Shown: positions 13,681 through 38,649 of the stretch, piece by piece
How positions within the stretch are numbered: the first letter of the stretch is position 1
Layout of the letters: each line of letters begins with the position of its first letter
IMG/VR virus record: IMGVR_UViG_3300021338_000003
Coordinates: 1 to 64,000 of that record
Strand: one strand, 5' to 3'
Length of the DNA stretch: 64,000 nt
Translations under genes and position numbers: made by a program
Notes under the pieces: generated by a model
What the model saw: the letters and a program-made list of their open reading frames with translations, nothing else
Databases searched by the model: none
What the model was told of the DNA's origin: nothing

Positions 13681-13932
13681 TCAGTCCTTGTAGTCAGTGG
13701 GCAGCGGGCCATCAGAGGGAAAGTCTTCACCCGGAAAGCTCTCCGGACCGGCAGGCTCCAGAACATCCCTAATAATTTCAGACAGTGTCTCGGCCACTTC
13801 CAGGGGCGGTTCCTGAAGTTCTGCATCGAACGCGACCGAGGGTACAACATCCATCAAGCAACACCCGCCGGCTGAACAACCTCGGGGGTTGCAACAATCG
13901 GTACCTGTCTTCGCACAAGTGAAAGACACCAC
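13681..13932 (-). CDS. Small Cys-rich hypothetical protein
   Basis: 83 aa, coupled to the dnaX stop; N-terminal CAKTGTDCCNPRGCSAGGCC. Confidence 0.45.
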   Translation of the reverse strand: MVSFTCAKTGTDCCNPRGCSAGGCCLMDVVPSVAFDAELQEPPLEVAETLSEIIRDVLEPAGPESFPGEDFPSDGPLPTDYKD

Positions 13933-15062: not shown

Positions 15063-15117
15063 ACAACCTCCGTTGACAGCGTTTAAATCGTTGTTATCCG
15101 TTACTGTGAGGTTTTCT

Positions 15118-22889: not shown

Positions 22890-25800
22890 ATGACTACCCG
22901 ACGCAAAAACAGCCTAACAAAGATGTTCGGGTGGATGAAGAACAGCCCTCTCATCCGCAAGGTTGTAGCCTTTGCCCTATCTCGAAAGAGGGGTGGTCCC
23001 TCAGCCGCCCTGGCAGTCGAGCATCAGGGTGGTCAGGACCTAGATGACCGTTATGGTCCTCTACCCGTAGATTCCGATAACTATATTCTCGACCCCTATA
23101 CCGGTGAAAGACTTCAGGTTGAAAACGGTTGGGAAGATACCGATACGGTTGGGGACCACGAACCGTATTTGGGTGCCATCGGTCGTAGTGATGGTTCTAT
23201 TCGGATCGGAAGCGGCGCACCTGCCTCCCAAAGGCGACAAGGTCTAGACCAACTAGACTTCACTAATTATTTGCAGGTCACCCTTTCAGAAGACGCTCAC
23301 AGCTTCATTGCGCAAGCCACGATGACTGGGTCTCCGACGCTAGAAAACCCGGTCTTCGGGATCGATGCATCCGATTACCGGTGGGGTATTCAGGTAGTCG
23401 GGCCGAACGAGATTAGTAACCGCATTTTCGATAACACCGTGGTACGTGCTACTGCCACCATCACGGGTGCCAGCGCATTCGCATCTGGTGTGACGTTCAC
23501 CGCTGGAGGTGGTGCCGACTCTGATGGTGATGTATCCCTAGCCGCGTGGGATGACACGGGCACGGAAGTTAACACCCCAGATACCGACAACTTCGCCGGT
23601 ACCGTCACCAGCCTGGCGGGTGAGTACACTATTGGCCGTGGCCGCGGAGGCGGTGATTTCGTCAATGGGACCATCAATGTATGGGGTGGCTTCGACGGTG
23701 ACCATTATGATTCTGCGACGCTTTCAACAATGGAGGCATCCATTCGTGCCGGGATGGATGTAGATACCCTAGCCGGGACGTATGGCGGGGCTTGGTCGGA
23801 TGGTATAACACCGGGCGCTTACTCCCGCATCGCAACCGAGAAACTTTTCAGTCTATCAGGGGCTGGGTCGAAGCCAGTGGTTGCTCGCCCGGGCACATCA
23901 GGAGAAACATACACCCAGCCACAGGATATCGATGGTCTAATCGGTGATTGGGATTGCTTGCGCGGTGCTACCTATACCGGTACCACCCTGACGGGTTGCT
24001 ATGATTATGGTCCAAATGAGTGGGACCTGACTCACGGTAGCACCGTAGGCCAACGTACTGTCGAGATGCTGGGTCGCAACGTATTCCTTCCAGGTACCGG
24101 TGGAGGGACTTACCTGGAGCGTGCGATCACTACAACCATCGAAGACTTCACCGTTACGTGCTCGATCCCGATCAGGTCGTACAGCTCGACGGGCCGTTCG
24201 TATTTCAGCATGAACGTAGCGGCCATCGCCACGTGGGGACTTCAGATCCAGCAGGGGCCGTCTGTTGGTACAATGGCCATCCTTGACGATTCTGGTACTA
24301 CGGTTGCAACCATACCTCATGGTGCCCGTACCTCGGGCAACGGTGATGCTGCTCATGCGATCCTGGTGTTTCGACGTACAGCTGGTGGGGATGTTGTTGT
24401 CGACTGCTGGTATGACCAGGACGCGGGAGGCGGGTTGGTACGGTCCACACAGGTGGTAGCCTCCGATACCTTCTCTGCGTCGATTGACGTTACTGGAGTG
24501 GCAGTCGGCGGAAGGTATGGAACAAGCGTAGGGTCGTGGAACAGCTTTTCAGGCGTGCACCGTGTTACTATGCACGACAGCGCCATATCTGACGATGACA
24601 TGATTGCCGTGGTCAAGGGTCACGCTGCCCGACTGGGTTGGGACACCGATTTGATTAAGCCTCTGGTTCTACCGGCCAAGGCTGCGCGTTACGTCGGCGG
24701 GAAGACGCTCGAAGATAGCGTAGGCGAGCTTCCGAAGGACGCAGACGGTTACTATCTTACGCGGAATGGGTTGTCCTACCTCACGGTAGACGATGGGTTC
24801 GACATTGGCGATGTCGTCGGTGAACCCAAGCTCTACGGTCTACTCACTGCACAGGTGATAGGAAACCCGGCCACCCAGCGCCGCTCGGGCTTCGACAACA
24901 ATGACGACCTCAACTACGCGCTCGTGACTCTCGATACGAGCGACATCTCCTTCCTCGTCTCGGCCAACCGTGCAACGAACACCTATGACGCCATCTTCGA
25001 TTCAACAACGGCTGACCCGCGAGTCCAGTTATCGACTGGTCCAGGAGGCATCGCCACACTGCGGATGCGCACCACCGACGGAGGCGTCACCGAATTTGCT
25101 GATACAGCAGGAATTGTCCCGCCTGGGCAGAACTTCTTCGGCGGTACCTTGGATGGTAGCACGGGAGACATGCTGTCGAAGGTGTGGGATAGCTCCGGTG
25201 CCCCATTGGGCACAGGGTCTCACACCGGAACGGTAGCTGTCGACATTTCCGGTCCCCTCTACTTGGGTCGGCAATTCAACAACGCATATGCCTGGGATAG
25301 CGGCATCTTCTGGGCCATGGGTTGGGACGGGACGGTCATGTCCGAAGCTGACCTTGACGCCATCGTAGCGGCAATGCAGGCCGGTGCGGACATCGATGAC
25401 ATCAGGACCACCTACGGTGTCACGTTGGCCACGGACGGTATCGTCTGCGGTGCCTACGACCCCGATAACCCTACGGTCCTCTTCACCGAAGCTGGTGCAG
25501 GCGAGTCTGTCCGACTCCACAACACGGCTCCGGCACTCCCCGCAGTCGCCGCCCGCTACATCGGAGGGAAGACTCTGAATGACTCCATCGGGGAGCTGTT
25601 CAAGGATGATGACGGCTACTACCAGTCGCGCCTCACCGGCGAATACCTGACTTTGGACGATGGATTCGGGTCAGGGGATGCGATTGGTCCGGAGTACATG
25701 TATGGCCTGAAGACCGCCGTAGTAGAGAACAACGGCACACCAATCGCACGTGGTGGGTTGCGCCGGAACGGGTTTACATTCGATAGCTCTGGCAGTCAGT

Positions 25801-27338
25801 ACATCGGATTCAACCTCACCTCCGAAGAGGCTCACAGCTTCCTCGTCTACCTGGAAGGCGATCCGTCTGTGACGAGCCCCAGCACCCAGTTCGTGTTTGG
25901 CTTTGATGCCACGGCTCCTCTCGGGGCAGGCTGGCAAGGCTTGCTGTCGAACTTGGAACCCAACCTTCGGACTTACAACGCTGCGACCACCGAGGATGTA
26001 GCCGCACGTGTACTGATTTCACAACCGGTCACTGCCAATGACCTCCAGTGGATCGGCGGCTTCCACGACGGCACCGACACCGAGCTATCGTGCTGGGATG
26101 ATGTCGGTGCACAGCTGGGGGTCACTGGCACAAGTACCCGCTCTGTGCCCGTCACGCTTACGGCGCAGCCCTACTTCCTCGGCGGTCGGCCTGGCGGTGG
26201 TGTGCCTCTCCAGTACGCCGAAGTGCTGGAAGTCTACGGATGGGACGGTGGTGCAGGGAAGACTTTCTCGGAGCTGCAGGCAGTCATCGACGCATCCATT
26301 GCAGGCGGAGAACCCTCCGCCAATGCACCGGGTGCAGACCTGGCCTCCGACGGCATCATCTGCGGTGCCTACGACCCGCTGGACACGACCATCCTCTTCA
26401 CCGAATCCGGGGCAGGGGAGTCGGTGCGTGCTCACGTCACTGCACCCGTGGTACCGGCTCTCGTCGCACGCTACAACGGAGGTAAGACTCTCACGGATGC
26501 AACAGGTGAGCTGCCCAAGGACGAGAACGACTACTATAAGTCGCGCCTTACCAACGAGTACCTCTCTGTCGATACGGGATTCGCCGACACAGACGTTGTG
26601 GGTGAGCCGAAGGTGTACGGTCTTCTGACTGCCACGGTACATGGCGCGCCTGCAACTGCGCGACGTTCGGGCTTCGATGCCTGCACCGACGCAGACTACA
26701 TCGAGATCCTCCTGTCTGACTCTGACTACGGGAGTGCGCTGGCGCTGACTCGACAGACATCCACCCCGGCTGTACCGCAGGGATTCCTCTTCGGGGCAGG
26801 TACTGACCCTCGATGGGGAATGCTGTACACCTCGGGTGATTACCGAACCCAGACGGTCAACAGTGGTGTACTGCAGACCGACATAGCCGGAGCACTGTCC
26901 ACCACGGCGGCTGATCGGTTCATCGCTGCCACTGTAGACAACGCGAGCGGAACTCTTACGCAGACGGCACACGCATGGGATGAGACAGGAACGCCACTGG
27001 CAGGCTCTCCGGATCAGGACACTAGCGGTGCCCACGGCGGGGACCTTTCCGGAGTCTATTACCTTGGTCGGACCAAGAGCACCGGGTATGCCTACACCAG
27101 TGGAACAGTCCGAATTGCTCTCGGATGGGATGGAGCGACTTTGTCCGATGCGCAGCTGCAGTCTGTCGTAGATGACATCCTGGCTGGAGAGGATATCGAC
27201 ACTGTAGCCAGCAACGCTGCTGTGATGCCTGCCCTGGCGACAGACGGACTCGTTTGTGGAGTCTATGACCCCTACGATACCGCCCTACTCTACACTTTGG
27301 GAGCCTCAGGTGCTGACGTTACCCTGACAACTCCGTAA
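22890..27338 (+). CDS. Giant repetitive virion fibre/adhesin with ConA/LamG-like modules
   Basis: 1482 aa, rich in G/T/A/D. Four units of about 290 aa start with ARYxGGKTLxDxxGELxKD (first copy degenerate) and end with DGxxxGxY, plus one different LamG-like insert. Confidence 0.7.
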   Translation: MTTRRKNSLTKMFGWMKNSPLIRKVVAFALSRKRGGPSAALAVEHQGGQDLDDRYGPLPVDSDNYILDPYTGERLQVENGWEDTDTVGDHEPYLGAIGRSDGSIRIGSGAPASQRRQGLDQLDFTNYLQVTLSEDAHSFIAQATMTGSPTLENPVFGIDASDYRWGIQVVGPNEISNRIFDNTVVRATATITGASAFASGVTFTAGGGADSDGDVSLAAWDDTGTEVNTPDTDNFAGTVTSLAGEYTIGRGRGGGDFVNGTINVWGGFDGDHYDSATLSTMEASIRAGMDVDTLAGTYGGAWSDGITPGAYSRIATEKLFSLSGAGSKPVVARPGTSGETYTQPQDIDGLIGDWDCLRGATYTGTTLTGCYDYGPNEWDLTHGSTVGQRTVEMLGRNVFLPGTGGGTYLERAITTTIEDFTVTCSIPIRSYSSTGRSYFSMNVAAIATWGLQIQQGPSVGTMAILDDSGTTVATIPHGARTSGNGDAAHAILVFRRTAGGDVVVDCWYDQDAGGGLVRSTQVVASDTFSASIDVTGVAVGGRYGTSVGSWNSFSGVHRVTMHDSAISDDDMIAVVKGHAARLGWDTDLIKPLVLPAKAARYVGGKTLEDSVGELPKDADGYYLTRNGLSYLTVDDGFDIGDVVGEPKLYGLLTAQVIGNPATQRRSGFDNNDDLNYALVTLDTSDISFLVSANRATNTYDAIFDSTTADPRVQLSTGPGGIATLRMRTTDGGVTEFADTAGIVPPGQNFFGGTLDGSTGDMLSKVWDSSGAPLGTGSHTGTVAVDISGPLYLGRQFNNAYAWDSGIFWAMGWDGTVMSEADLDAIVAAMQAGADIDDIRTTYGVTLATDGIVCGAYDPDNPTVLFTEAGAGESVRLHNTAPALPAVAARYIGGKTLNDSIGELFKDDDGYYQSRLTGEYLTLDDGFGSGDAIGPEYMYGLKTAVVENNGTPIARGGLRRNGFTFDSSGSQYIGFNLTSEEAHSFLVYLEGDPSVTSPSTQFVFGFDATAPLGAGWQGLLSNLEPNLRTYNAATTEDVAARVLISQPVTANDLQWIGGFHDGTDTELSCWDDVGAQLGVTGTSTRSVPVTLTAQPYFLGGRPGGGVPLQYAEVLEVYGWDGGAGKTFSELQAVIDASIAGGEPSANAPGADLASDGIICGAYDPLDTTILFTESGAGESVRAHVTAPVVPALVARYNGGKTLTDATGELPKDENDYYKSRLTNEYLSVDTGFADTDVVGEPKVYGLLTATVHGAPATARRSGFDACTDADYIEILLSDSDYGSALALTRQTSTPAVPQGFLFGAGTDPRWGMLYTSGDYRTQTVNSGVLQTDIAGALSTTAADRFIAATVDNASGTLTQTAHAWDETGTPLAGSPDQDTSGAHGGDLSGVYYLGRTKSTGYAYTSGTVRIALGWDGATLSDAQLQSVVDDILAGEDIDTVASNAAVMPALATDGLVCGVYDPYDTALLYTLGASGADVTLTTP

Positions 27339-27374: not shown

Positions 27375-30300
27375 GTGCCAGTAGACAGACCATCCTGGAC
27401 CGAGAACTTTGTTGAGGCTCTCCTGAGGTATGGCCTCAAAAAGCGCTACGTTAATACGGTTGTACCCGCAGCACCAAATATCTCTTCAATCACGGTAACC
27501 CCCATGGGCCCCGTCCGAGTAGGAGATGTCCTTACAGCTGTAGTCAATCTCACTTGGACCCCCACCGGGTCCCTAACATACCAATGGCGGGTGGGCGGCG
27601 TTGACCAGCCCGGAGAAACCAACCCTACGTATACTACGACGGCTGCCGGTGACGTCACAGTATACGTGGTGGCCACCAATACCGAGGGATCCGACAATCT
27701 CGAAAGTGACACAGTGCGGGTCAACTCTGAGGTGACCATCGCCATGATGGGGGATGTCAACTCGGTTGGTGGCCACTCGGATACCTCCAGTGATGCTGGG
27801 CTATTGGGTGCATGGTATGAATACCGAAATTCCGGAGGCGCCACTACCATACCCACTACTGGATTTGGTCCCGCCCTAGGAGTCACGCAGAGCTTGGCTT
27901 CGGCCAGCCAATTCGTCCAGCTGGCTGACCACTCTGTATCCGGGGCTACCCTATCCGATTGGGCCTCAACCCACGAGGCAACTTGGTACGCTGTCATCGA
28001 TGCCATGACATCGGGTGACACCCCCACCGATGTAATAATCACCCACGGCGAGGAGGATGCTAAGACTCTTTCTGATGCCGATGCATATGAAGCCAACCTC
28101 CTGGCGCTCATATCCCGGATTCGGGCATTGTATGGTATAGCAGTACGCATCCACCTTTGCTCTCTGCGATCCCTGCCCCTCGGTACATACCCCTATTGGG
28201 CCACAGTACAAGCCGCCCAGGCTGCCGTGGTTGCTGCTGACCCCTTAGTGTTTGCCATCAATCCAGCCGGATTCCCTAAGGTAGACCCTGTTTCGTATAC
28301 TGGAGAGGGCCAGCGAGACCTTGGGCAGGCATATGCTACCTCAATAGTCGATGAGGGAGGAGCCATTACTATTCTCCCCCGTTTTGTGGGTGGAACCATC
28401 GATCCTTCCTCTCCCCTTGAGGGGCAAACTCTCACCGCCACTATGAGGTGGGCCGGTACGTATCCACAGTCCTATGCCTCCCAATGGTCCGATGATGGGG
28501 TAGAACTCTCGGGAGAAACTTCTGAAACCCTAGTGGCAGCCCCAGAGGGCACCGTAGAACTCAACCAGGATGCCACCAATAGCGTCGGAACCGTATCCGG
28601 AAACGTGTCTACCACTGTCGGGGCCGTGGCCTCTTTGGGTAGTGCCATTAAGAGAAAAGCTCTGGGAGACGACTATATTATCACTGCCGGTCAAGTCACT
28701 ACGGTCAGTGACACCGTTGCTTTTGTCCTATTCGAGCTTGATGATTTTTCAGGGTCTGATGGAACCATCATCGACTTTGGTATTGATGGAAGCACCGGAT
28801 CACCCTTCCGGCTGTCTATCACCGGAGAATCCAGTCTCCAACTCGAATACAGAACCAACTCTGGACTGCAAACTCTGGCCCTTGCTACTTCCGTTGATAC
28901 CTTCTATGACGGCGCCCAACACCTGGTATGGATTCGAATTCAAGACGGCACTCCGGGAACCGTTCGAATGGGCATCGCCGCTACTGGTGGGGATGAAGCC
29001 ACTGATTCCCGGCCCGAAGGTATCACTTCCGGGCTGACCAGCGCCGCAGCCGCTTTGTTTGCTGACATTACCACTCCAGCCCGAGAAATGGCCGGAGCTG
29101 TGTCAGCAGTGGTTATTGATGGCTGGATCACAGACACCCGAGTTGATTCCCTACACACCTCCATCGCTGGGGTCAGTGGTTCTCTATCTTGGGTCGTATT
29201 CCTGTCCGAACTGGATTCTCATATGACCGCCGAGGGGTCTACGTACATTTGGTCTCCTATTGCGGATATTGGTGACATCACTGTTGCTGGTGATGTCACT
29301 GATAACTCTGGGACCTTCAGTCACACCCTGGTGTCCGGTATCAATAATACGGCCGGATGGCCTTATGCCGAAGGATTCAGTCAGTCCACGTTGTCACTGA
29401 GCGGAGGAACTCACATCCAAGGGTCCTCTACATATGCAGTGTCTGATACCATGACCCTCCTATGGTACGGAAATGTTCAAAGCCTTGGTATTTTGGACGG
29501 GTTTCTAGCCGGAGCGGTCCCGGACTCCGGCGAATTTGGTGTGGCCATACGGTATACCGACAGCGCGACCATCCAGGCTATTTGGAGAGATGGTGGGGAC
29601 AATCTTGTCACCCAAGACCATACTGTGGAAAATATATCGACAGCCGATCGAGATTTGCACTTTGTGGCTGCCAATCCATCGTGGGGCGTACGGGTTGGTA
29701 TGGCCCATATGACTGCCCAGAGTTATTATTCTGAGAATTCTACAACTGTTGCTGCTGGCACTTCCCCTCACGGTCCAGGCTTCGGTTCTCCACATACCTC
29801 TACCTCGCAGACAAACCCCACCCTGCGAGGGGTTACATATGAAAACGCTTGGGCGCTGCAAATCAACCGAGACCTCACTGATGACGAGTGGGAAAGGGCT
29901 CGTAGAGGTGATTGGTTCTGGGCCTACGGAGATGCTTCCGTAGCGTGGATTGTTGTTCCGACTACAGACCTGGAAATCGGAGAGACCATCAGTGATTCAA
30001 AGGTAGACCAATCTGAACTCACAATGGTTGTTGATGGACATCAAAGTACCCTTTCTGGACAAATATCAGGGGATGATGTTATACCTCCTACCCCCACTGC
30101 CCCAGTCATTCTAGATATAAGCATAGACTGGACAGACGCTGATGCTGATACAGACCCCAACGTCGGGGACACTTTCTTCCCTATATTTTCGACCACTGGT
30201 GACCCAACTCCTGTTCTGTCGTACGAATGGTTCCTGGGCGCCGTGTCCCAAGGCACGACAACCTCCCTCGTGGTTGGGTCTGATGGAAGCTTGACTGTTG

Positions 30301-31139
30301 ATATAGAGGCTACAAACAGCGAGGGTACTGATAGCGATACATCAGCAGCCGTTATAGTGTTGGCCAGTGCATCCGGCCTGGCTCCAGACGAAGTATCAGG
30401 ACTATACTTGTGGGAGGATGGATTTGACTCAGCCACCTACAATGGGTCTAATGAGCTTACTGGTATTACGGACAAAGGCCCAAATGGTATTGATATCACG
30501 CCTGACTCCGGTACTGGTCCGACCCCTACCTCATATGAAGTGGATGGGGTCCCAACTGATCTTCCAGGGCCCTTCACGGTTGCGCTTCCTACTAACCATC
30601 CCGAAAGCGCTACCGGACTCGCCAAGGTATTCACCGATATTACCGTTATGGCTATTGTACCAACCATAACATCGCAAACAAATGGTACTGCGATGTTTAG
30701 TATGTATGGCGATGACGGCGGCGGTGCCAACTATCAACTTGTTCTAGGCCAGGGTCCAACCCCTGATGATATTCAAGCGTTTATGCAAGGAGGGTCTATT
30801 GAAATACCGGTTGACTGGTCAACCGGTAACAATGGGTCTCATGCCATCGTGTTCTTTCGCAGGCAGGCAGGGGTTGACCTCTATCTTGACAGCTGGTATG
30901 ACAACCTGTCAGGTGGAGGAATAACAAAACCCGCACAGGTTACATACGGGTCAGACCCGACTACCGGTACCATGACTATTGACAGTGTAGCGTTCGGGGG
31001 TAGAGGGTCCATTACACAAGTGTGGGTAGGAAACCCCATACATATGGTTGCCGTATGGGACGAGTATGTCAGTGATGGAGACATTGTATCCCTGGCCCAA
31101 TGGGCAGGATCCCGACTTGGATTCACCGGAATATCGTAG
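27375..31139 (+). CDS. Large modular virion protein: Ig-like repeats, SGNH/SASA-like domain and LamG-like domains
   Basis: VGDVLTA...YQW...VATNxxG Ig-like motif three times; MMGDVNS / HGEED / DPVSY SGNH-like blocks; C-terminal LamG-like module. Confidence 0.7.
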   Translation: MPVDRPSWTENFVEALLRYGLKKRYVNTVVPAAPNISSITVTPMGPVRVGDVLTAVVNLTWTPTGSLTYQWRVGGVDQPGETNPTYTTTAAGDVTVYVVATNTEGSDNLESDTVRVNSEVTIAMMGDVNSVGGHSDTSSDAGLLGAWYEYRNSGGATTIPTTGFGPALGVTQSLASASQFVQLADHSVSGATLSDWASTHEATWYAVIDAMTSGDTPTDVIITHGEEDAKTLSDADAYEANLLALISRIRALYGIAVRIHLCSLRSLPLGTYPYWATVQAAQAAVVAADPLVFAINPAGFPKVDPVSYTGEGQRDLGQAYATSIVDEGGAITILPRFVGGTIDPSSPLEGQTLTATMRWAGTYPQSYASQWSDDGVELSGETSETLVAAPEGTVELNQDATNSVGTVSGNVSTTVGAVASLGSAIKRKALGDDYIITAGQVTTVSDTVAFVLFELDDFSGSDGTIIDFGIDGSTGSPFRLSITGESSLQLEYRTNSGLQTLALATSVDTFYDGAQHLVWIRIQDGTPGTVRMGIAATGGDEATDSRPEGITSGLTSAAAALFADITTPAREMAGAVSAVVIDGWITDTRVDSLHTSIAGVSGSLSWVVFLSELDSHMTAEGSTYIWSPIADIGDITVAGDVTDNSGTFSHTLVSGINNTAGWPYAEGFSQSTLSLSGGTHIQGSSTYAVSDTMTLLWYGNVQSLGILDGFLAGAVPDSGEFGVAIRYTDSATIQAIWRDGGDNLVTQDHTVENISTADRDLHFVAANPSWGVRVGMAHMTAQSYYSENSTTVAAGTSPHGPGFGSPHTSTSQTNPTLRGVTYENAWALQINRDLTDDEWERARRGDWFWAYGDASVAWIVVPTTDLEIGETISDSKVDQSELTMVVDGHQSTLSGQISGDDVIPPTPTAPVILDISIDWTDADADTDPNVGDTFFPIFSTTGDPTPVLSYEWFLGAVSQGTTTSLVVGSDGSLTVDIEATNSEGTDSDTSAAVIVLASASGLAPDEVSGLYLWEDGFDSATYNGSNELTGITDKGPNGIDITPDSGTGPTPTSYEVDGVPTDLPGPFTVALPTNHPESATGLAKVFTDITVMAIVPTITSQTNGTAMFSMYGDDGGGANYQLVLGQGPTPDDIQAFMQGGSIEIPVDWSTGNNGSHAIVFFRRQAGVDLYLDSWYDNLSGGGITKPAQVTYGSDPTTGTMTIDSVAFGGRGSITQVWVGNPIHMVAVWDEYVSDGDIVSLAQWAGSRLGFTGIS

Positions 31140-31148
31140 GAGAGACCG

Positions 31149-31556
31149 ATGACATACGCTATTTTTCTATCTTTGTCCTGGGCAAACCCCAGTATTGAGC
31201 AAGTCCAGAAGGAAAACCTCACTCTCAGGGCAGCCATTGAAGACTACCAGAAGTCCAACGAAGCTCTAGAAGAAGCCGTCGAAGCTCTTCAATCTCAAAA
31301 TAAGGAGCTTCGGCTATCTATTCGAGAATTTGAAACAGCCACTCGAAGTTTCGAGGACACTTTGAAAGCCAAAGAGGAACTCATCATCCTCCATAAGAGC
31401 CGTGCTGATGCGGCTGAAAAATGGGCCGAGCGAAGTGAGGAACTCCGAAGGAAAGAGATCAATTCTCCCGACCTCGGCAAGGCTGAACGGTTGATTTGGG
31501 CTGGTGCAGTGGTAATCACTACTGGGTATGCTCTGATTCAAAAACAAGGAGGATAG
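31149..31556 (+). CDS. Exported coiled-coil protein with C-terminal TM (spanin-like?)
   Basis: Signal-like N-terminus, long heptad region and hydrophobic C-terminus. Confidence 0.45.
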   Translation: MTYAIFLSLSWANPSIEQVQKENLTLRAAIEDYQKSNEALEEAVEALQSQNKELRLSIREFETATRSFEDTLKAKEELIILHKSRADAAEKWAERSEELRRKEINSPDLGKAERLIWAGAVVITTGYALIQKQGG

Positions 31557-31557
31557 C

Positions 31558-31908
31558 GTGGAAATCGAATTCAATTCCCTGTGGGGTATCATATTAGCTG
31601 TTGTTGCGGTTGCCATAGGGGTTGTGGGGTCCAACCTCAAAAAGTGGAAGTCCAACAGAGATGCTCACAGGGCCCTGGAGGAGTACAACAAAGCCCGTGA
31701 AGATATTGAGAATAGTGTCTCAATAGTTAGCGAAAGAGCCAAAAGGTCCGAGAAAACAGCCCAAGAAGCACTTGGAAGGGCCCGGAAGGGTGTCGAAATA
31801 GCTGATGCCATAGGACCGAAGGCCGACAGACTACTCCAGGAGGCCCGAGAAGCTCGCTTGCGGGCTGAAAAACATCTAGATAGCCTTGACGACAAGAAGG
31901 ACGTCTGA
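31558..31908 (+). CDS. N-terminal TM plus coiled-coil protein (i-spanin-like?)
   Basis: LWGIILAVVAVAIGVVG followed by a charged helical domain. Confidence 0.45.
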   Translation: MEIEFNSLWGIILAVVAVAIGVVGSNLKKWKSNRDAHRALEEYNKAREDIENSVSIVSERAKRSEKTAQEALGRARKGVEIADAIGPKADRLLQEAREARLRAEKHLDSLDDKKDV

Positions 31909-32957: not shown

Positions 32958-33578
32958 TCTGAGACCAGTCAATAGGGGATAGAAAACCCCTAAGCGGTAG
33001 GGTCAGAACTTCCCAAAACGTCTCAGAAGACCCAGAAATGCACTGGATACGGCCCAAAGCCCTTCGTGTATGACCGCGAGCTTTTTGTAGGCCCCAGAAA
33101 ACGTCCAGGCCATACATGAAGGGGCTTCTCAAAATGCTCTTTCTGACACTGATCGTTCCCAGATATTGCCATGTCAATTCTCCGAACACACTGAGCCATA
33201 AGGCATGCATGGACCAACCTTTGGGGAGGGGGGTTTGGGGGGTGGGGCGGTTCCCACCCCACCCCCGATCCCAAGATCGATCTCCCCTGGTGGAAAGGTG
33301 GGGAATAGACTGAGTTCCCCACCACTGGAAAGGTGAGGAAGGTGGAAGCACGAGGTTGCGGAGCAACCGAGTGACCCACAACCCATCCCGCCAGGGATGG
33401 GGCCAAAGAGAATGACCGTTGCCAAATCGATGGAGTTCCGCCAAATCGATGGAACTCTCGTGGAGGACCGGCCAAATTTCGGGTGCAGGCAGATTGTGAT
33501 TAGCCCCATGTCGTCGTAGGGGCTGTCAATCTGCCCCCGGTTAGCCAAATGTTTGACTGTCTCCTCCAAAAACGTGTT

Positions 33579-34373
33579 ATGGTCCATATCATCCCGGCGG
33601 TTCTGATGTTGGGAGCAATTTCCTTTCTGCCCGAGAAAGGAATAGTCCACGGTCCATGCACTACCCTTCCCATTTGGGTACGTCAGGTTTGGGCATTCAC
33701 CGGGTTTTTGACCTGGATATCGTATGGGGAAATAGCCTATCAGGCATGGACCCTTCATGACCATCCCTCCACTTCCTGGCTACCCCGCTGGCTTTTGCCG
33801 GGGGTTACCCTTTTTGTGGGTACTTGTGGTCTGGGTCACCTTCTAGCTTCCGTGGGCCTTCAGTTTTGGGCCCGTTGGGACCTCGTCGCATTCTGGCAGG
33901 GTATTACTGCCGCCATATCGGTCCCTGTTGCTCTCGCTATTGCCCTTGGTTCCAACTCCCTGAAGCACGAGGCCATGATCGCCTCGTGGGGTCTGCATGA
34001 AACTCTTGTGAACCTGGGCCGATCTTTTGTCTACCGGGTTCGCCCAGATAACACCATCGTTTTTTCTATTGGCGACGGGTGGAAGCTTCCTGCGTTTCGT
34101 AAGTTTGCCCCCAACGGGTTTCTTGAAGACCCAGAACTCATGCACCTTTCAAAATGGATTGATGAAGGTTCTATTCTCCGAGACACCAACATTGATCAAG
34201 TTCGAAAGACAAAAAAGCAACATGAGTGGGTATCCCGCTCATATGGCTATACCTGGTTGAATACCGCCCGACCCCTCCCGGGCGGTGACATCGTTATCGA
34301 AGTCCAAAACGCGTCCAAAGTGGCGTCGGAGGAACGATATCGGATTATGGATGAAGTATTGGGAGAGGAGTAG
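33579..34373 (+). CDS. Membrane sensor: ETR1-like ethylene/Cu-binding TM domain plus PAS-like domain, no kinase
   Basis: LTWISYGEI, LFVGTCGLGHLL and ITAAISVPVAL match ETR1 helices I-III (IAIAYFSI, FIVLCGATHL, LTAVVSCATAL). The C-terminus ARPLPGGDIVIEVQN is PAS-like. Confidence 0.7.
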   Translation: MVHIIPAVLMLGAISFLPEKGIVHGPCTTLPIWVRQVWAFTGFLTWISYGEIAYQAWTLHDHPSTSWLPRWLLPGVTLFVGTCGLGHLLASVGLQFWARWDLVAFWQGITAAISVPVALAIALGSNSLKHEAMIASWGLHETLVNLGRSFVYRVRPDNTIVFSIGDGWKLPAFRKFAPNGFLEDPELMHLSKWIDEGSILRDTNIDQVRKTKKQHEWVSRSYGYTWLNTARPLPGGDIVIEVQNASKVASEERYRIMDEVLGEE

Positions 34374-34376
34374 CCC

Positions 34377-35117
34377 ATGAGCTTGGACAAAACACCTGAC
34401 CTTCCGCCTCTACGGGAACCGAGGAGGGAAGAACTCTCGGACTCGGAGCGGATCGACCAAACCATTCGCGTGCTCAGTGCTGTACGCGGCGAATTGAAAA
34501 GTGTGTCTGTGCAGGTGGCTTCCCTCAATGGGCACATAGCCACCGAGATATCAGCTCTTACTACTTCTATTACGACGTTGAGTAGTCGCATCCGAACCTT
34601 GGAATCACACCGTCAAGACGAAGAAAGAGACAACGAAATACACCAAGCCAAAAGGGAAGCCAAAAGGGAGGGTAGGGATGAGGGGTATATCCAGGCAGCC
34701 CAAGACATTGCTGCCCGTCTCGGCATCAATACCGAGGATGTCTTGGCTATGCGTCAGTCAGATACCTTGGTCCCCAGGGCCCGGGACCATGGACCATCTA
34801 TCCCTACTAACCCTGGAACCGCAACCCCACTATCCGAGAAAAAACCGCACTGGGTCATCCAGGCTGTTGGGACCTTTTTCTCCAATACTATCAGCCTAGC
34901 TGGCACCGAGGGCGGGAAACGTCTGATTGTAGGGGCCGTCGCTTTGGGCCTCGGTCAAGACGCTATTATTACTCTTGGGAAAATCATAGAGAAAATAGAC
35001 CCAACGCCAGCCCAAGTGGTATCGGTTGAAGTTGGCAACCCAGATACAGATGCGGACGCCGACGTTGACATAACCGAAAGTGACGCCGATACAGATGCCG
35101 ATGGGGGACCACGGTGA
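34377..35117 (+). CDS. Coiled-coil membrane protein with acidic DADAD tail
   Basis: Heptad region, hydrophobic LIVGAVALGLG and C-terminal DTDADADVDITESDADTDAD. Confidence 0.6.
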   Translation: MSLDKTPDLPPLREPRREELSDSERIDQTIRVLSAVRGELKSVSVQVASLNGHIATEISALTTSITTLSSRIRTLESHRQDEERDNEIHQAKREAKREGRDEGYIQAAQDIAARLGINTEDVLAMRQSDTLVPRARDHGPSIPTNPGTATPLSEKKPHWVIQAVGTFFSNTISLAGTEGGKRLIVGAVALGLGQDAIITLGKIIEKIDPTPAQVVSVEVGNPDTDADADVDITESDADTDADGGPR

Positions 35118-36286
35118 ACATACTGCGCAAGACGATTCTGGCCAGGTTTGATAGCATACTGCTATACCATGGAACCGACGCCTATAACGTTGAATCCATT
35201 CTCCGTCAAGGCTTGAAACCCCGTGGGTCAGTGGGCAACCTGGGTTGGGACAAGAATACCCTCGTCGACGTGAGAAACAATTCTGTGTTTCTCACAGCTG
35301 ACATCGAAAAGGCCGCTCGATATTCTTTTGGTGAAGAGAAAGACCAGGTACCAGCCATCCTTGAAATTCGCATTTCTGGACGCCATGCCCAAAAACTCAA
35401 GTATGATCCTCTTGACCGTAATGATGCTGCATGGGAAATAGACGATGAGGGCGGAACTGATTTTGAAGCCCTCGTTATACTAGAAGACATTGCTAGTGAT
35501 GCCATACGTAACATCACTGGTCACAAACCCCACTTTTCGGTTAGGGGACTACCTCAATTCCATGAGGTAGAGGATTTGGATGGGGTTAATGTCTACAAGG
35601 TCCTACCTCAAGCCATCCTGAAGGTGCTAGACTCGAACTGGATTACTAGGAAGGATGTGGTTCGGGCTATACAGGATGCACTTAAGAAGTGGGGTAGGGC
35701 CAACAAGAGAACCCCTGGGCAGTACCAGTCAATCAGTATTCACCCATACCTAGACGTGCGAAGAGACGGCACTATCAAAATGTCCAAAGACTGGATGGAA
35801 ACCCGAGAACAATTGTTCTATCAAAAGGGGTTACCCCCAAGTACTATCAAAGGTGTGTGGTTTAGGGAGATTGACTTTCGATCATCTGGTATTAATCAGA
35901 TGAAGGTCGATGAAAAGTCATTCGGGGTCAGACGCCTACCATACGAGGTGGTCGAGGACCATCAGACATCCATAGAAATCACCAACAAAATCATCAGAAA
36001 AGAATATTACACAGTCGACATGCTATATCGGAATTCGGAAGATTTTTTGGTAGTATCCGACCACCTGGAGAATATGGGCCTCGAAAGATGGGAAGAAGTA
36101 GACCATCTTCAGACTCTGACCCGGGAAGAAATCGAGGAGGATTTTGAATCCTTGATAGACACTCTTGCTGAAAGTGCAATCTATATACAGGATGACCTCC
36201 ATAACAGTCACGGAAATGACCCTGCTATTCATGAAGATTTGTGGATTCTCGTAAACCCTAGGGATGCCATGGAGCTTGTGTCATGA
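35114..36286 (+). CDS. ADP-ribosyltransferase-fold protein (KptA/PARP-like clade)
   Basis: LLYHGT...SILRQGLKP...VFLT...A.RYS...AILEI, with a distal EQLFY...LPPSTIK. Confidence 0.65.
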   Translation: MNILRKTILARFDSILLYHGTDAYNVESILRQGLKPRGSVGNLGWDKNTLVDVRNNSVFLTADIEKAARYSFGEEKDQVPAILEIRISGRHAQKLKYDPLDRNDAAWEIDDEGGTDFEALVILEDIASDAIRNITGHKPHFSVRGLPQFHEVEDLDGVNVYKVLPQAILKVLDSNWITRKDVVRAIQDALKKWGRANKRTPGQYQSISIHPYLDVRRDGTIKMSKDWMETREQLFYQKGLPPSTIKGVWFREIDFRSSGINQMKVDEKSFGVRRLPYEVVEDHQTSIEITNKIIRKEYYTVDMLYRNSEDFLVVSDHLENMGLERWEEVDHLQTLTREEIEEDFESLIDTLAESAIYIQDDLHNSHGNDPAIHEDLWILVNPRDAMELVS

Positions 36287-36819
36287 AATCCAAGTATAAC
36301 CTCGCCGTTCCCAAGTTAGCCAAAGCTTGGGGAATTGTTGAGAAAATGGGAAAGTCCGAAAACCCCGAGGTACTTGGGTTTCATGAAGAGCTTATCAAGG
36401 CCCTCGATACGTCCAAGTGGACAGACGCCGAAGACCAGATGCTCGCGAAGGTGACCGAGAGGGCCAATTATCTGCGGCACGTGTTGGACATGCACTTCGC
36501 CAAGGACACGGCACAGGGGAAATGGAACCCTGATGTTCCATCAACAGGACACTGTGCTGTTGCGGCCATAATCGGACACTGGATGTTCAGGTGGCGGGTT
36601 GGCAGTAGTATAGTCAATCAGGCCAGTCACTGGTACAACATGGCCCACGGTCTCACTATTGATATCACCGGTGACCAATTCGGAAAGCCTGAAGTCCAAG
36701 TGTCCCGAAGCATCTTGTATCCGCACAAGCACCGTGTTCGCGCTATCAGTGAGGCCAATGAAGAGACCATCAGGCGCGCCAACTTGCTAGCCCAACGAGC
36801 CGGATTGGTATATTCATGA
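36283..36819 (+). CDS. YunG-like papain-fold protein
   Basis: GHCAVAA...SHWYN...DITGDQF (Cys-His-Asp/Asn). Confidence 0.6.
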   Translation: MKSKYNLAVPKLAKAWGIVEKMGKSENPEVLGFHEELIKALDTSKWTDAEDQMLAKVTERANYLRHVLDMHFAKDTAQGKWNPDVPSTGHCAVAAIIGHWMFRWRVGSSIVNQASHWYNMAHGLTIDITGDQFGKPEVQVSRSILYPHKHRVRAISEANEETIRRANLLAQRAGLVYS

Positions 36820-37076
36820 ACACCATTGACGCACATAAGTATAGCGGCCATCATGGCCAGGACCTTCTAGCCAGCGAGAAGGCTGGATGCTTTCACTGCG
36901 AAAGGATATTTCCGGTGGGTGATATACAGCAATGGACCGACAGCAAAAAGACGGCCCTCTGCCCTCATTGTGGTATCGATGCTGTGCTCCCGGACATCCG
37001 GGTAGACATTAGCCCCGAGTTCCTTGCCAAAATGAATGACGATTGGTTCAAGAAGAAGGCTGACGTCCATAAGTGA
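36816..37076 (+). CDS. Small zinc-ribbon protein
   Basis: GCFHC...TALCPHCGIDAVL. Confidence 0.7.
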   Translation: MNTIDAHKYSGHHGQDLLASEKAGCFHCERIFPVGDIQQWTDSKKTALCPHCGIDAVLPDIRVDISPEFLAKMNDDWFKKKADVHK

Positions 37077-37824: not shown

Positions 37825-38649
37825 ATGTTCGGTGGTGATGATTCGTGGGATGAGGACGATTGGGGCGAGTGGAGCGAGGACGGGGATTCGTCCGGGGCTG
37901 CTTCCGATGACAAGCCGGCTGAGGAGGAGGCCCCCAAGCCTGCTGCTGCCAAGCCGGCAGCCAAGAAGAAGCGGCCCGCCAAGGCCAAGGCGGTTGACAA
38001 GCCCGCTGCGGCCAAGAAGAAGCGGCCCGCCAAGGCCAAGGCGGTTGACAAGCCCGCTGCGGCCAAGAAGGCAGCTGCGGCGAAGAAGGCAGCTGCGGCG
38101 AAGAAGCCAGCCGCTGCCAAGAAGCCTGCGGCCAAGAAGGGTCCGCTGGTTCCGCTGACCTTCTTCAAGGCCGGTGACAACCTCGTTCTCCAGAAGAACG
38201 ACCCCCAGACTGGCGAGGCGCAGAACTTCAACAAGGCGCACTTCAAGAAGGGTGCCCTCAAGGGTCTGATGACGTACGACTTCAAGTCGGTGGGCTATAC
38301 TACGCCCTACGCCCAGATCAAGGAGCTTCGGGCCGCCCTGAAGGAAGCTGGCTACAAGCTCGTTCGTGGCAAGGCTCCAGCTGCTGCGAAGCCGGCCGCT
38401 TCCAAGAAGCCGGCCGCTTCCAAGAAGCCGGCCGCTTCCAAGAAGCCCGCGGCTGCGAAGCCGGCTGCAGCCAAGAAGCCGGCCGTCAAGCTGGCCAACC
38501 GGAAGGCGTACAACACCCTCGTGTCCTCCATCCGGGACAGCCTGGTGATGGTCGGTGCTCGCTTCAGCGAGGACGACGCCCGCAACGCCCTGGACTACTT
38601 CCTGTCGCGCCCCGAGGCGTCCGTCAGAGATGCCTGGGACAAGCGGTGA
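37825..38649 (+). CDS. Histone H1/AlgP-like Lys-Ala-Pro-rich DNA-binding protein with acidic N-terminus
   Basis: KKPAAA repeats in two blocks; N-terminal DDSWDEDDWGEW; AGGAG RBS. Confidence 0.75.
   Translation: MFGGDDSWDEDDWGEWSEDGDSSGAASDDKPAEEEAPKPAAAKPAAKKKRPAKAKAVDKPAAAKKKRPAKAKAVDKPAAAKKAAAAKKAAAAKKPAAAKKPAAKKGPLVPLTFFKAGDNLVLQKNDPQTGEAQNFNKAHFKKGALKGLMTYDFKSVGYTTPYAQIKELRAALKEAGYKLVRGKAPAAAKPAASKKPAASKKPAASKKPAAAKPAAAKKPAVKLANRKAYNTLVSSIRDSLVMVGARFSEDDARNALDYFLSRPEASVRDAWDKR
37960..38061 (+). repeat. 51-bp perfect tandem duplication in the histone-like gene
   Basis: GCCAAGAAGAAGCGGCCCGCCAAGGCCAAGGCGGTTGACAAGCCCGCTGCG twice; an 18-bp unit also occurs three times at about 38389-38442. 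Confidence 0.9.

What the first reader, a model, noticed from the sequence alone, without database searches (positions are those of the whole stretch)
33579..35117. Phage-encoded ethylene-receptor-like sensor with no kinase, next to a coiled-coil membrane protein
Seen: three TM helices align with the ETR1 ethylene-binding domain and keep the Cys-x3-His motif (CGLGH), the helix-I Tyr and the helix-III TAxxS. The ETR1 Asp25 position is Gly. A PAS-like domain follows and the protein ends without a HisKA, GGDEF or receiver output. The next gene starts 3 nt later and encodes a coiled-coil/TM protein, and spanin-like genes lie about 2 kb upstream. Known: this domain binds Cu(I) and ethylene in plants and cyanobacteria. 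Inference: a two-gene small-molecule or copper sensing unit that may tune lysis timing, or a dominant-negative interferer of a host kinase. I know of no described phage system like it.
Basis: partly seen in the sequence, partly recalled or inferred. Interest (0 to 1): 0.78.

Follow-up and report, generated by a model that had tools for sequence, protein, structure and literature searches.

The report
Phage ethylene-receptor-like membrane gene pair
A 250-kb phage carries a very divergent, kinase-less copy of the three-helix membrane domain that plants and bacteria use to bind copper and ethylene, fused to a PAS-like domain and coupled to a small coiled-coil membrane protein. The same pairing recurs in unrelated phages, often beside their cell-wall-cutting enzymes, and I found no description of it.

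Summary
Gene 33549/33579-34373 encodes a signal-anchor helix, a three-helix ETR1_N (ethylene-binding-domain, EBD) homologue and a PAS-like domain, with no output domain. Pfam alone is sub-threshold (20.6 bits, cut-off 27). Homology is nevertheless firm: its only relatives among 1.8 billion proteins are short EBD proteins that pass the Pfam cut-off, and hhalign against 16 cellular EBDs gives 98% (E=1.6e-13).

Cys-x3-His, the helix-I Tyr, TAxxS and an N-terminal Cys are kept. Asp25 is Gly, Pro36 is Ala and Lys91 is Gln, so high-affinity ethylene binding is unlikely.

The main result is comparative. I found an undescribed set of output-less EBD proteins in phage contexts. In 16 of 17 loci the EBD gene abuts or overlaps a gene for a hydrophobic, mostly single-pass and often coiled-coil protein. 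In two loci a bona fide PAS domain sits in that partner instead, which links the parts functionally. Four of about eleven loci have a muralytic enzyme within three genes.

Best reading: a phage-autonomous two-protein membrane module acting late in infection, possibly timing lysis. That function is inferred. The host-kinase decoy reading is weaker, and the decaying-fragment reading is not supported.

The parts
33549..34373 (+). Gene for the 274-aa EBD-PAS-like membrane protein (P0001).
   Evidence: ORF and gene calls. Only self at high identity among 5.8 billion and 1.84 billion proteins.
33573..33635 (+). N-terminal hydrophobic helix (residues 9-29), a signal anchor or 'TM0' preceded by Lys/Arg. 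It would place the following Cys on the outer face.
   Evidence: Hydropathy. AF2 helix 5-26. A similar extra helix occurs in L019, P0005 and L081.
33657..33968 (+). ETR1_N / ethylene-binding-domain homologue (residues 37-140). It comprises the pre-helix Cys37, helix I (Gly52 at the Asp25 position, Tyr59, Ile62, Ala63), helix II (Val90, Cys93, His97) and helix III (Gln117 at the Lys91 position, Thr120, Ser124).
   Evidence: Pfam 20.6 bits. Transitive homology. hhalign 98%. AF2 pLDDT 85-96 when run with the 79-sequence alignment. Residue tally.
33825..33839 (+). CGLGH motif, equivalent to ETR1 Cys65-x3-His69, the Cu(I) ligands.
   Evidence: Cys and His are invariant in 25 of 25 phage-context and 53 of 53 cellular EBDs.
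33981..34370 (+). PAS-like cytoplasmic domain (residues 145-274).
   Evidence: ESM Atlas features 0.96/0.95 to PAS_4 clusters, and structure TM 0.60-0.72 to PAS_7 and sensor proteins. Strand/helix order in the single-sequence model: two strands, two helices, three strands. No Pfam or hhalign support. One homologue, P0004, at 33% identity.
34377..35117 (+). Partner gene for a 246-aa tail-anchored protein. It has a coiled-coil-like N-terminal half (about residues 18-110), one TM segment (about 183-201; nt 34923-34979) and an acidic Asp/Thr/Ala tail (nt 35031-35114).
   Evidence: Sequence and hydropathy. No family match. The same architecture follows the EBD gene in L005, L007, L008, L009, L019, L080 and L082.
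35114..37076 (+). Three further genes chained by 4-nt overlaps: ART/PARP/Tpt1-like (35114-36286), YunG-like (36283-36819) and a zinc-ribbon protein (36816-37076). They may be co-transcribed with the pair; whether they belong to the module is unknown.
   Evidence: ORF coordinates and gene calls. Pfam and PHROG hits. This downstream set was not seen in the related loci examined.
31149..31908 (+). Two small coiled-coil/TM ORFs directly after the tail-fibre-like gene. The 135-aa one has a coiled coil and a C-terminal TM. The 116-aa one has an N-terminal TM and a coiled coil.
   Evidence: Sequences. Only weak hits, for example Holin_LLH at 17.9 bits against a cut-off of 24.9.

Best explanation
The two genes form a phage-autonomous membrane module that belongs to an undescribed set of phage-borne, output-less ethylene-binding-domain (ETR1_N) proteins.

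Shown:
- Gene 1 has a signal anchor, then an outward-facing Cys. A three-helix EBD follows that keeps the Cys-x3-His metal site, and then a PAS-like domain that is inferred to be cytoplasmic.
- Gene 2, 3 nt downstream, is a coiled-coil protein anchored by one C-terminal TM helix.
- Across phages of very different G+C content, the EBD gene abuts or overlaps a gene for a hydrophobic, mostly single-pass and often coiled-coil protein.
- The PAS domain sits on either gene.

Inferred:
- The EBD probably forms a dimer through the conserved Cys, as ETR1 does through Cys4/Cys6.
- It holds a metal, probably copper, and passes a conformational signal through PAS and coiled-coil contacts on the cytoplasmic face to the partner.
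- The output is a late-infection membrane event, most likely the timing of membrane permeabilisation or lysis.

The window copy is a fast-evolving member with a degraded ligand pocket (Asp25 to Gly, Pro36 to Ala, Lys91 to Gln). It probably does not bind ethylene with high affinity and may work as a metal- or redox-dependent or purely structural variant.

My confidence by part: identity about 0.9, two-gene module about 0.85, lysis-related function about 0.35.
For: Identity:
- The window protein groups with L019 (SH-aLRT 95). L019 has the same layout of TM0, EBD and a C-terminal domain, followed by a coiled-coil, hydrophobic segment and acidic-tail partner.

Phage setting:
- The window contig is IMG/VR UViG_3300021338_000003.
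- PHROG hits include phrog_29287 at E=7e-91, plus clamp loader, DnaB and ligase families.
- Related loci carry portal, terminase, tail-fibre and RecT/YqaJ genes.

Module:
- In 16 of 17 loci a gene lies within 8 nt of, or overlaps, the EBD gene. My crude hydropathy test found a TM segment in 13 of those 16 partners. L005 and L019 have a hydrophobic C-terminal stretch seen by eye, and the L011 partner is cut by the contig end.
- Locus G+C ranges from 0.36 to 0.69.
- Rosetta-stone evidence: in L007 and L008 the EBD stands alone, and the partner is PAS + C-terminal TM, with a coiled coil in L007. The PAS passes the Pfam cut-off at 27.8 and 40.3 bits.
- Both arrangements are consistent with PAS being cytoplasmic.

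Lysis link:
- Amidase_2 lies directly upstream in L005.
- An annotated endolysin lies directly downstream in Maribacter phages Colly and Molly. Their authors found an amidase but no recognisable holin or spanin, only TMD proteins nearby (PMC8776804).
- A CHAP domain lies three genes away in L022.
- A lysozyme-like protein lies three genes away in L082.
- My rough estimate: four of about eleven loci against about 6% expected per locus gives p of about 3e-3.
- The short phage EBDs (111-183 aa, three TM helices, charged C-tail) have the size and inferred topology of class I holins.

Precedent for ion conduction: rice OsERS1 is reported to be a cation channel that depends on Cys4/Cys6 and not on Cys65 (PMC13261662).
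Against: - Nothing here tests function.
- The window copy has no muralytic gene within 31-39 kb, and at 274 aa it is far larger than a holin.
- The slot after tail-fibre genes and beside lysis genes is also a classic site for morons and superinfection-exclusion genes, so synteny does not discriminate.
- L005 and L082 contain other small TM proteins that could be the real holins.
- Strict conservation of Cys/His is not a property of known holins.
- Partner proteins share architecture only, with no detectable sequence similarity.
- Partners come in two opposite topologies (N-terminal or C-terminal TM), so they may not be one family.
- Several 'phage-context' sequences lie on contigs too short to confirm a phage origin. 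P0022 groups with Planctomycetota cellular EBDs.
- The PAS assignment rests on predicted structure and language-model features only. My own AF2 models were of low confidence in that region (pLDDT 46-64).
Confidence: 0.45

Rival explanations
1. Decoy or dominant-negative receptor. The kinase-less EBD-PAS protein forms heterodimers with a host EBD histidine kinase or diguanylate cyclase, through the TM domain and the N-terminal Cys. That silences or locks host signalling during infection, for example cell-surface, pilus or biofilm programmes.
For: Cellular EBD proteins are abundant in Planctomycetota and Cyanobacteria and nearly all carry HK or GGDEF outputs. The phage copies keep the pre-helix Cys that corresponds to the ETR1 dimerisation cysteines. 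From general knowledge, not tested here: truncated etr1-1 N-terminal fragments confer dominant ethylene insensitivity in plants.
Against: The phage copies are very divergent from any cellular EBD. The window copy is at most 31% identical over the core and has the longest branch in the tree, which is not what a mimic that must pair with a host receptor would show. Maribacter phages and other low-G+C loci carry the module, yet no Bacteroidota genome was among the 57 cellular hits; this scan was limited by its search patterns. A decoy needs no dedicated, translationally coupled partner. The host of the window phage is unknown.
Confidence: 0.15
2. Accessory (moron-type) membrane system unrelated to lysis. 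Candidates are superinfection exclusion, a counter-defence or conflict sensor, or a regulator of the downstream ART-like effector operon (35114-37076).
For: The position after tail-fibre genes is typical for morons. In the window the pair is chained by a 3-nt gap and 4-nt overlaps to ART/PARP-like, YunG-like and zinc-ribbon genes. The L081 partner carries an effector-associated domain, EAD11. L020 has a 2H-SAK/InPase protein two genes downstream.
Against: The downstream effector-like genes are not conserved across the related loci. There are no PADLOC matches. The recurrent neighbours are structural and lysis genes rather than defence genes.
Confidence: 0.2
3. A true ethylene (or other small unsaturated or gaseous ligand) receptor. 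The Cu(I)-loaded EBD binds the ligand and the pair adjusts the infection programme to it.
For: Cys65/His69, Tyr32, Ile35, Ile62 (Val here), Thr94 and Ser98 equivalents are kept. Most phage copies have Asn at the Asp25 position. In ETR1 the Asn variant is functional with reduced ethylene affinity and occurs naturally in some cyanobacteria and plants (PMC10266040; PMC11971883 abstract).
Against: The window copy has Gly at Asp25, and D25A abolishes ethylene binding in ETR1 (PMC10266040). It also has Ala at Pro36 and Gln at Lys91. Its closest C-domain relative, P0004, has lost helix I and the His, so ligand binding looks dispensable in this sub-lineage.
Confidence: 0.1
4. A decaying fragment of a captured host sensor-kinase gene with no function.
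For: A very long branch and loss of three of the residues that define canonical EBDs. Pfam score below the cut-off.
Against: The ORF is intact and tightly coupled to downstream genes. The same output-less architecture plus partner occurs in the sister sequence L019 and in many other phages. The partner shows no kinase remnant. The nearest relatives in 1.84 billion proteins are short EBD proteins, not kinases. The metal ligands and helix-III motif are retained.
Confidence: 0.05

Closest known systems
Ethylene receptors with an N-terminal ethylene-binding domain: Arabidopsis ETR1/ERS1, Synechocystis SynEtr1, Azospirillum AzoEtr1 (EBD-PAS-HK)
   Same: Homologous three-helix TM domain (Pfam ETR1_N). 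It shares the Cys-x3-His copper ligands, the helix-I Tyr and Ile, the helix-III T-A-x-x-S motif and an N-terminal Cys before helix I. As in AzoEtr1 and the cellular locus L053, a PAS-type domain follows the EBD (PMC11819568).
   Different: There is no kinase, GGDEF or receiver output. The Asp25/Lys91 polar pair is replaced by Gly/Gln in the window and by Asn/His in most phage copies. Pro36 is Ala. The gene is phage-encoded and paired with a tail-anchored coiled-coil protein. The Pfam score is below the gathering cut-off.
Cellular output-less EBD proteins of Phycisphaerales (L023, L025, L030; 277-327 aa)
   Same: An EBD followed by a coiled coil and a roughly 100-aa C-terminal domain with no Pfam match and no output domain.
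   Different: They have canonical Asp25/Lys91 and very high ETR1_N scores (108-122 bits). At least L023, the only one whose surroundings I read, lies in ordinary chromosomal context next to a two-component system, with no TM/coiled-coil partner gene seen there.
Class I holins and pinholins (for example lambda S105, phage 21 S68) and holin-antiholin pairs (T4 T/RI)
   Same: This applies to the short phage EBD relatives. They are about 110-180 aa with three TM helices, an inferred N-out/C-in topology and a charged C-terminal tail. They lie beside endolysin genes and are coupled to a second small membrane protein.
   Different: There is no sequence relationship to any holin family in Pfam or PHROGs. 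The conserved metal-ligand motif is unknown in holins. The window protein is 274 aa with a PAS-like domain and is not next to an endolysin.
Rice OsERS1/2 'hormone receptor-type ion channels' (PMC13261662)
   Same: An EBD-containing protein reported to conduct cations in a way that depends on the N-terminal Cys pair and not on Cys65. This gives a precedent for an EBD acting as a membrane-permeabilising element. The phage copies keep an N-terminal Cys.
   Different: It is a full-length plant receptor in the ER membrane. No channel activity has been shown for any bacterial or phage EBD. The link is an inference.
Rz-type i-spanins
   Same: Some partners (L014 gp062, L015, L017, L022) have an N-terminal TM followed by a coiled coil. 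L022 has a weak hit to Rz-like spanin phrog_739 (E=0.008).
   Different: The window partner has the opposite topology (coiled coil first, C-terminal TM). In the window and L005 no adjacent gene encodes a lipoprotein; L021 and L022 do have an upstream lipobox protein. In L007 and L008 the partner's soluble part is a PAS domain, which is normally cytoplasmic.

Membership tests
ETR1_N / ethylene-binding domain (Pfam PF25487) | Score at or above the Pfam gathering cut-off (27 bits) | tested here: not met
   20.6 bits, E=5e-4, profile positions 5-88 of 97.
ETR1_N / ethylene-binding domain (Pfam PF25487) | Homology shown by profile-profile comparison and by intermediate sequences | tested here: met
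   hhalign probability 98%, E=1.6e-13 against 16 cellular EBDs. The nearest relatives P0002, P0003, P0005, P0006 and L019 pass the cut-off at 33-59 bits.
ETR1_N / ethylene-binding domain (Pfam PF25487) | Three TM helices with the copper ligands Cys65 and His69 on helix II | tested here: met
   AF2 helices 42-69, 80-106 and 110-155 at pLDDT 85-96. Cys93 and His97 align to the invariant Cys and His.
ETR1_N / ethylene-binding domain (Pfam PF25487) | Asp25 on helix I. It is Asp in 93.6% and Asn in 3.7% of 1,221 EBDs, and is needed for copper and ethylene binding (PMC10266040). | tested here: not met
   Gly52. This is the only Gly among the 78 aligned EBDs; the phage copies are mostly Asn.
ETR1_N / ethylene-binding domain (Pfam PF25487) | Lys91 on helix III, the partner of Asp25 (PMC10266040) | tested here: not met
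   Gln117. Cellular EBDs have Lys or Arg in 47 of 53; phage copies are mostly His.
ETR1_N / ethylene-binding domain (Pfam PF25487) | Other residues needed for ethylene binding in ETR1 (Tyr32, Ile35, Pro36, Ile62). The residue list is from my memory of Wang et al. 2006; the 'seven residues' are cited in PMC11819568. | tested here: inconclusive
   Tyr59 and Ile62 are kept. Pro36 is Ala63. Ile62 is Val90.
ETR1_N / ethylene-binding domain (Pfam PF25487) | N-terminal Cys for a disulfide-linked dimer | tested here: met
   Cys37 aligns with a Cys present in 24 of 25 phage-context and 51 of 53 cellular sequences. Disulfide formation itself was not tested.
ETR1_N / ethylene-binding domain (Pfam PF25487) | Saturable Cu(I) and ethylene binding | not testable with these tools
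   Needs biochemistry.
Ethylene receptor / two-component sensor | A signalling output domain (HisKA + HATPase_c, GGDEF or receiver) on the same polypeptide | tested here: not met
   No such domain at E up to 1. The protein ends after the PAS-like domain, and the partner shows no kinase remnant.
PAS domain | Match to a PAS sequence profile | tested here: not met
   No Pfam PAS hit. hhalign against the PAS of L007/L008 gives probability 0.5%. No hit in PDB sequences.
PAS domain | PAS fold (five-stranded sheet with flanking helices) | tested here: inconclusive
   The ESM Atlas model of residues 145-274 gives TM 0.60-0.72 to PAS_7 and sensor proteins, and features of 0.96 to PAS_4 clusters. My AF2 models have low confidence in this region.
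Holin (class I) | Small membrane protein encoded next to the endolysin, with a charged C-terminal tail | tested here: not met
   The window protein is 274 aa with no muralytic gene within 31-39 kb. The feature is met by the short relatives in L005 and L022, and partly by L014 and L082.
Holin (class I) | Forms lethal membrane lesions that release endolysin | not testable with these tools
   Needs expression and lysis assays.
Spanin (partner gene) | An i-spanin has an N-terminal TM with a periplasmic coiled coil, plus an o-spanin lipoprotein gene | tested here: not met
   The window partner has a C-terminal TM. No lipobox ORF is adjacent, and there is no spanin family hit.

The most novel reading that the evidence does not exclude
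Phage EBD proteins are a new class of lysis-clock component. They would be metal-loaded, three-helix membrane proteins that act as ligand-, redox- or copper-gated holins or holin regulators, read out through a PAS/coiled-coil partner. In that case the plant hormone-receptor domain has been recruited by phages to decide when to permeabilise the host membrane.
Probability: 0.17. Interest if true: 0.85.

Novelty: new variant of a known kind. Interest (0 to 1): 0.62.

Why it matters
The ethylene-binding domain has so far been discussed as the input of plant, cyanobacterial and proteobacterial receptors that always carry an enzymatic output. This work finds stand-alone or PAS-only versions in phages of widely different G+C content, fixed next to a small membrane partner and often beside endolysins.

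That raises two possibilities. The domain may have an output-independent activity, such as metal binding, ion conduction or protein-protein switching. Or phages may use it for a late-infection membrane decision.

It also supplies natural variants of the Asp25/Lys91 pair (Asn/His, Gly/Gln) that bear on how the copper site is coupled to helix III. Cultured Maribacter phages Molly and Colly make the question testable.

For the window itself the message is more modest. This copy is a degenerate, fast-evolving member and is unlikely to be an ethylene sensor.

Tried and rejected
- The word-indexed protein search and megablast/tblastn against GenBank phages found nothing for the window protein.
- PDB sequence searches with the protein, the C-domain profile and the EBD profile gave nothing useful. 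No EBD structure has been solved.
- Single-sequence AF2 was poor (pLDDT 51). AF2 with 79 sequences resolved only the EBD.
- Foldseek against AFDB Swiss-Prot and the Atlas shape search with the whole model were weak (E about 0.1, TM below 0.4). Several plant ethylene receptors and PAS kinases were among the top hits, which I treat as a lead only.
- hhalign of the C-domain against bona fide PAS domains from partner genes was not significant.
- Partner proteins from different loci show no sequence similarity. The partner's Atlas look-alikes (DUF7201, DUF1515; 0.79) are below the lead level.
- No PADLOC or NCBIfam hits for the pair, and no PHROG for any phage EBD.
- The three assemblies carrying the gene are identical in nucleotide sequence over 14 kb, so no selection test was possible.
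- The promoter and terminator scan was not above the shuffle expectation.
- I rejected the 'kinase remnant' reading because BLASTP of the partner and of P0001 against an EBD-PAS-HK (L053) shows nothing beyond the EBD motif.
- Several alignment-driven collection scans failed for lack of a conserved stretch and were repeated with smaller alignments.
Full report
**1. What is at the coordinates**

The window equals positions 1-64000 of JGI metagenome contig Ga0213839_1000090. The contig is 250,817 bp and is listed in IMG/VR as UViG_3300021338_000003.

Its genes include DnaB-like helicase, ATP-dependent ligase, SbcC-like nuclease, clamp loader, exonuclease and a sigma-factor-like protein. There are also two giant tail-fibre-like proteins, an NlpC/P60 tail lysin, and strong matches to PHROGs of unknown function (phrog_29287 at E=7e-91). 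It is a jumbo-phage genome. I did not see capsid or terminase genes inside the window.

The finding covers two ORFs on the + strand. The second is 34377-35117 (246 aa), separated by 3 nt. Three more genes follow with 4-nt overlaps.

**2. The ethylene-binding-domain (EBD) claim**

Pfam gives one hit, ETR1_N (PF25487). It has E=5e-4 and 20.6 bits, below the cut-off of 27, but it spans almost the whole model.

An exhaustive phmmer search of 1.84 billion representative proteins found only five relatives.
- Four proteins of 141-308 aa align to the TM region with library-wide E of 3e-6 to 8e-4. Each passes the Pfam ETR1_N cut-off on its own at 44-59 bits.
- One protein (P0004) aligns to the C-terminal domain.

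A scan of 185,579 species genomes yielded 57 cellular EBD proteins, from Planctomycetota, Cyanobacteria and a few other phyla. Of the ten I scanned against Pfam, all score 86-122 bits on ETR1_N; seven carry HisKA/HATPase or GGDEF outputs, and one of those has the EBD-PAS-HK layout of AzoEtr1. The other three, all from Phycisphaerales, have no recognisable output domain. Most of the 57 ORFs are 500-1300 aa.

A profile of the window protein plus its sister L019, compared with 16 of these cellular EBDs, gives hhalign probability 98% and E=1.6e-13.

With a 79-sequence alignment, AlphaFold2 models residues 41-140 as three long helices at pLDDT 85-96. Homology is therefore secure, although the Pfam threshold itself is not met.

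**3. Key residues**

In the alignment with tool-derived canonical sequences:
- the pre-helix Cys is Cys37
- Asp25 is Gly52
- Tyr32 is Tyr59
- Ile35 is Ile62
- Pro36 is Ala63
- Ile62 is Val90
- Cys65 is Cys93
- His69 is His97
- Lys91 is Gln117
- the T-A-x-x-S motif is at 120-124.

According to PMC10266040, Asp25 is Asp in 93.6% and Asn in 3.7% of EBDs. It is critical for copper and ethylene binding, D25A abolishes ethylene binding, and Asp25 is coupled to Lys91. The window protein has lost both residues. It is the only one of 78 aligned EBDs with Gly at that site.

Copper binding through Cys/His remains possible. High-affinity ethylene binding is unlikely.

**4. The C-terminal domain**

No sequence method recognises it. 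My AF2 models have low confidence there, although the single-sequence model shows two strands, two helices and then three strands, a PAS-like order.

The ESM Atlas holds a model of this exact protein. For residues 145-274, the nearest clusters by language-model features are PAS_4 families (0.96, 0.95). The nearest by structure are PAS_7 and sensor HK/GGDEF proteins, with TM by query of 0.60-0.72 and 0.54 on both sides for a 152-aa PAS_7 protein.

I accept 'PAS-like fold' as probable, not proven.

**5. Related loci**

Following the relatives to their contigs, and searching viral, metagenome and GenBank phage collections, gave a set of output-less EBD proteins in phage contexts:
- L005/P0007
- Maribacter phages Colly_1 and Molly (gp063)
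- L015, L017, L019
- L020/P0009, L021/P0020, L022/P0014
- L080/P0010, L081/P0018, L082/P0008
- the short contigs L006-L009.

All those tested pass the ETR1_N cut-off. Their neighbours are portal, terminase, tail-fibre, RecT/YqaJ and DnaB genes.

None of the EBD proteins tested matches any PHROG. Among 50,697 GenBank phage records, only the eight Mollyvirus genomes carry one, annotated 'hypothetical protein'. Six literature searches found no paper describing phage EBD proteins.

In a quick maximum-likelihood tree the phage-context label is strongly clustered (4 changes against a shuffled mean of 21.4). The window protein pairs with L019 (SH-aLRT 95) on by far the longest branch. The tree has only 98 columns and many unresolved forks, so I use it only for these two points.

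**6. The two-gene unit**

In 16 of 17 loci the EBD gene is followed or preceded, with a gap of 8 nt or less and usually an overlap, by a gene for a hydrophobic, mostly single-pass protein that often has a long Glu/Lys/Arg/Gln-rich helical stretch. My crude hydropathy test detected a TM segment in 13 of those 16 partners. The L005 and L019 partners have a hydrophobic C-terminal stretch seen by eye, and the L011 partner is cut by the contig end. Locus G+C ranges from 0.36 to 0.69.

Two forms occur:
- Coiled coil first with a C-terminal TM: window, L005, L007, L008, L009, L019, L080, L082.
- N-terminal TM first: L014 (Molly), L015, L017, L020, L021, L022, L081.

In L007 and L008 the EBD protein is bare, and the partner is PAS followed by a C-terminal TM, with a coiled coil between them in L007. 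The PAS passes Pfam cut-offs. In the window the PAS-like domain is on the EBD protein; L019 and P0005 also carry a C-terminal domain there, but it is uncharacterised.

A domain that moves between two adjacent genes is classic evidence that the products work together. Both arrangements are consistent with PAS being cytoplasmic: three helices running from the outside in, or a tail-anchored protein.

P0004 is the only homologue of the window's C-domain. It is also followed by an overlapping coiled-coil gene, but it has lost helix I and the His.

**7. Function**

Muralytic genes lie within three genes of the EBD in four of about eleven loci with adequate flanks:
- Amidase_2 directly upstream in L005
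- endolysin directly downstream in Colly and Molly
- a CHAP domain in L022
- a lysozyme-like protein in L082.

For Molly, the authors reported an amidase but no recognisable holin or spanin, only TMD proteins nearby, and they inferred a canonical holin-endolysin mechanism (PMC8776804).

The short EBD proteins have the size, helix number and charged tail of class I holins. A 2026 paper reports that rice OsERS1 conducts cations in a Cys4/Cys6-dependent and Cys65-independent manner (PMC13261662). It is therefore reasonable, but unproven, that the module acts in the late membrane events of infection.

Arguments against:
- The window copy is large and is not near an endolysin.
- The genomic slot is also typical for morons.
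- Other small TM genes in some loci could be the real holins.
- Invariant Cys/His is not a holin trait.

**8. Rivals**

- A host-receptor decoy is possible where hosts have EBD receptors. It fits poorly with the extreme divergence, the dedicated partner, and carriage by Bacteroidota phages whose phylum gave no cellular hit.
- A conflict or effector-regulating role is hinted at by the ART-like operon in the window, EAD11 in L081 and 2H-SAK/InPase in L020. These neighbours are not conserved.
- A decaying kinase fragment is not supported.

**9. Verdict**

- The object is a divergent member of an undescribed set of phage-borne, output-less EBD proteins with a conserved membrane partner. I class it as a new variant of a known kind.
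- The module is of real interest, and it can be tested in cultured Maribacter phages.
- The window copy itself is probably not an ethylene sensor.

Noticed in passing
window 35114-36286 (+): A 390-aa protein whose N-terminal ~100 residues look like an ADP-ribosyltransferase / RNA 2'-phosphotransferase fold ('LLYHGT...'). Hits are Pfam PARP at E=3e-4, NCBIfam Tpt1/KptA at E=0.002 and phrog_11974 at E=2e-5. Its start overlaps the partner gene's stop by 4 nt.
   Followed up: partly
window 36283-37076 (+): A YunG-family protein (PF24585, 48.7 bits) and an 86-aa zinc-ribbon protein (phrog_30788, E=1e-18). Each overlaps the previous gene by 4 nt, giving a five-gene chain that starts at the EBD gene.
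   Followed up: no
window 37825-38649 (+): A 274-aa protein rich in Ala/Lys/Pro repeats (KKPAAAKK...), resembling histone H1 or a nucleoid protein. Its length differs between otherwise identical assemblies (274 aa in L001, 251 aa in L002), which suggests repeat-number variation.
   Followed up: no
window 27375-31139 (+) and 22890-27338 (+): Two giant tail-fibre-like proteins of 1254 and 1482 aa. The first carries a SASA-type sialate O-acetylesterase domain (37 bits), which suggests a receptor-modifying fibre.
   Followed up: no
window 31149-31908 (+): Two small ORFs directly after the fibre gene. They mirror the two partner architectures: a coiled coil with a C-terminal TM (135 aa), and an N-terminal TM with a coiled coil (116 aa; weak Holin_LLH hit). 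No lipoprotein ORF is nearby.
   Followed up: partly
alignment A9 (phage-context and cellular EBDs): The Asp25/Lys91 polar pair of cellular EBDs (Asp 41 and Asn 12 of 53; Lys or Arg 47 of 53) is replaced in phage copies mostly by Asn/His (Asn 19 and His 13 of 25). The few phage copies with Asp or Lys keep the canonical partner residue, for example P0018 with Asp/Lys. This looks like covariation at the copper site.
   Followed up: partly
L011 (P0004): The closest relative of the window's C-terminal domain (33% identity) has only two TM helices, keeps the Cys but lacks the His of Cys-x3-His, and is still followed by an overlapping coiled-coil gene. It is a further-degenerated version of the module.
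   Followed up: partly
L081 2463-3308; L020 8207-9856: The L081 partner (N-terminal TM plus coiled coil) ends in an effector-associated domain, EAD11 (PF19964). L020 has a 549-aa 2H-SAK/InPase-domain protein two genes after the EBD. These are possible links to conflict-system components.
   Followed up: no
L023, L025, L030 (Phycisphaerales genomes): Cellular EBD proteins of 277-327 aa with canonical residues, a coiled coil and an unassigned C-terminal domain but no output domain. L023 lies convergent to a histidine kinase / OmpR-type regulator pair.
   Followed up: partly
window 5018-6310 (-) and 13932-15185 (-): A phage-encoded sigma-factor-like protein (phrog_351, E=3e-24) and a clamp loader (phrog_5846, E=4e-55). 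Both are consistent with a jumbo phage that has its own transcription and replication apparatus.
   Followed up: no
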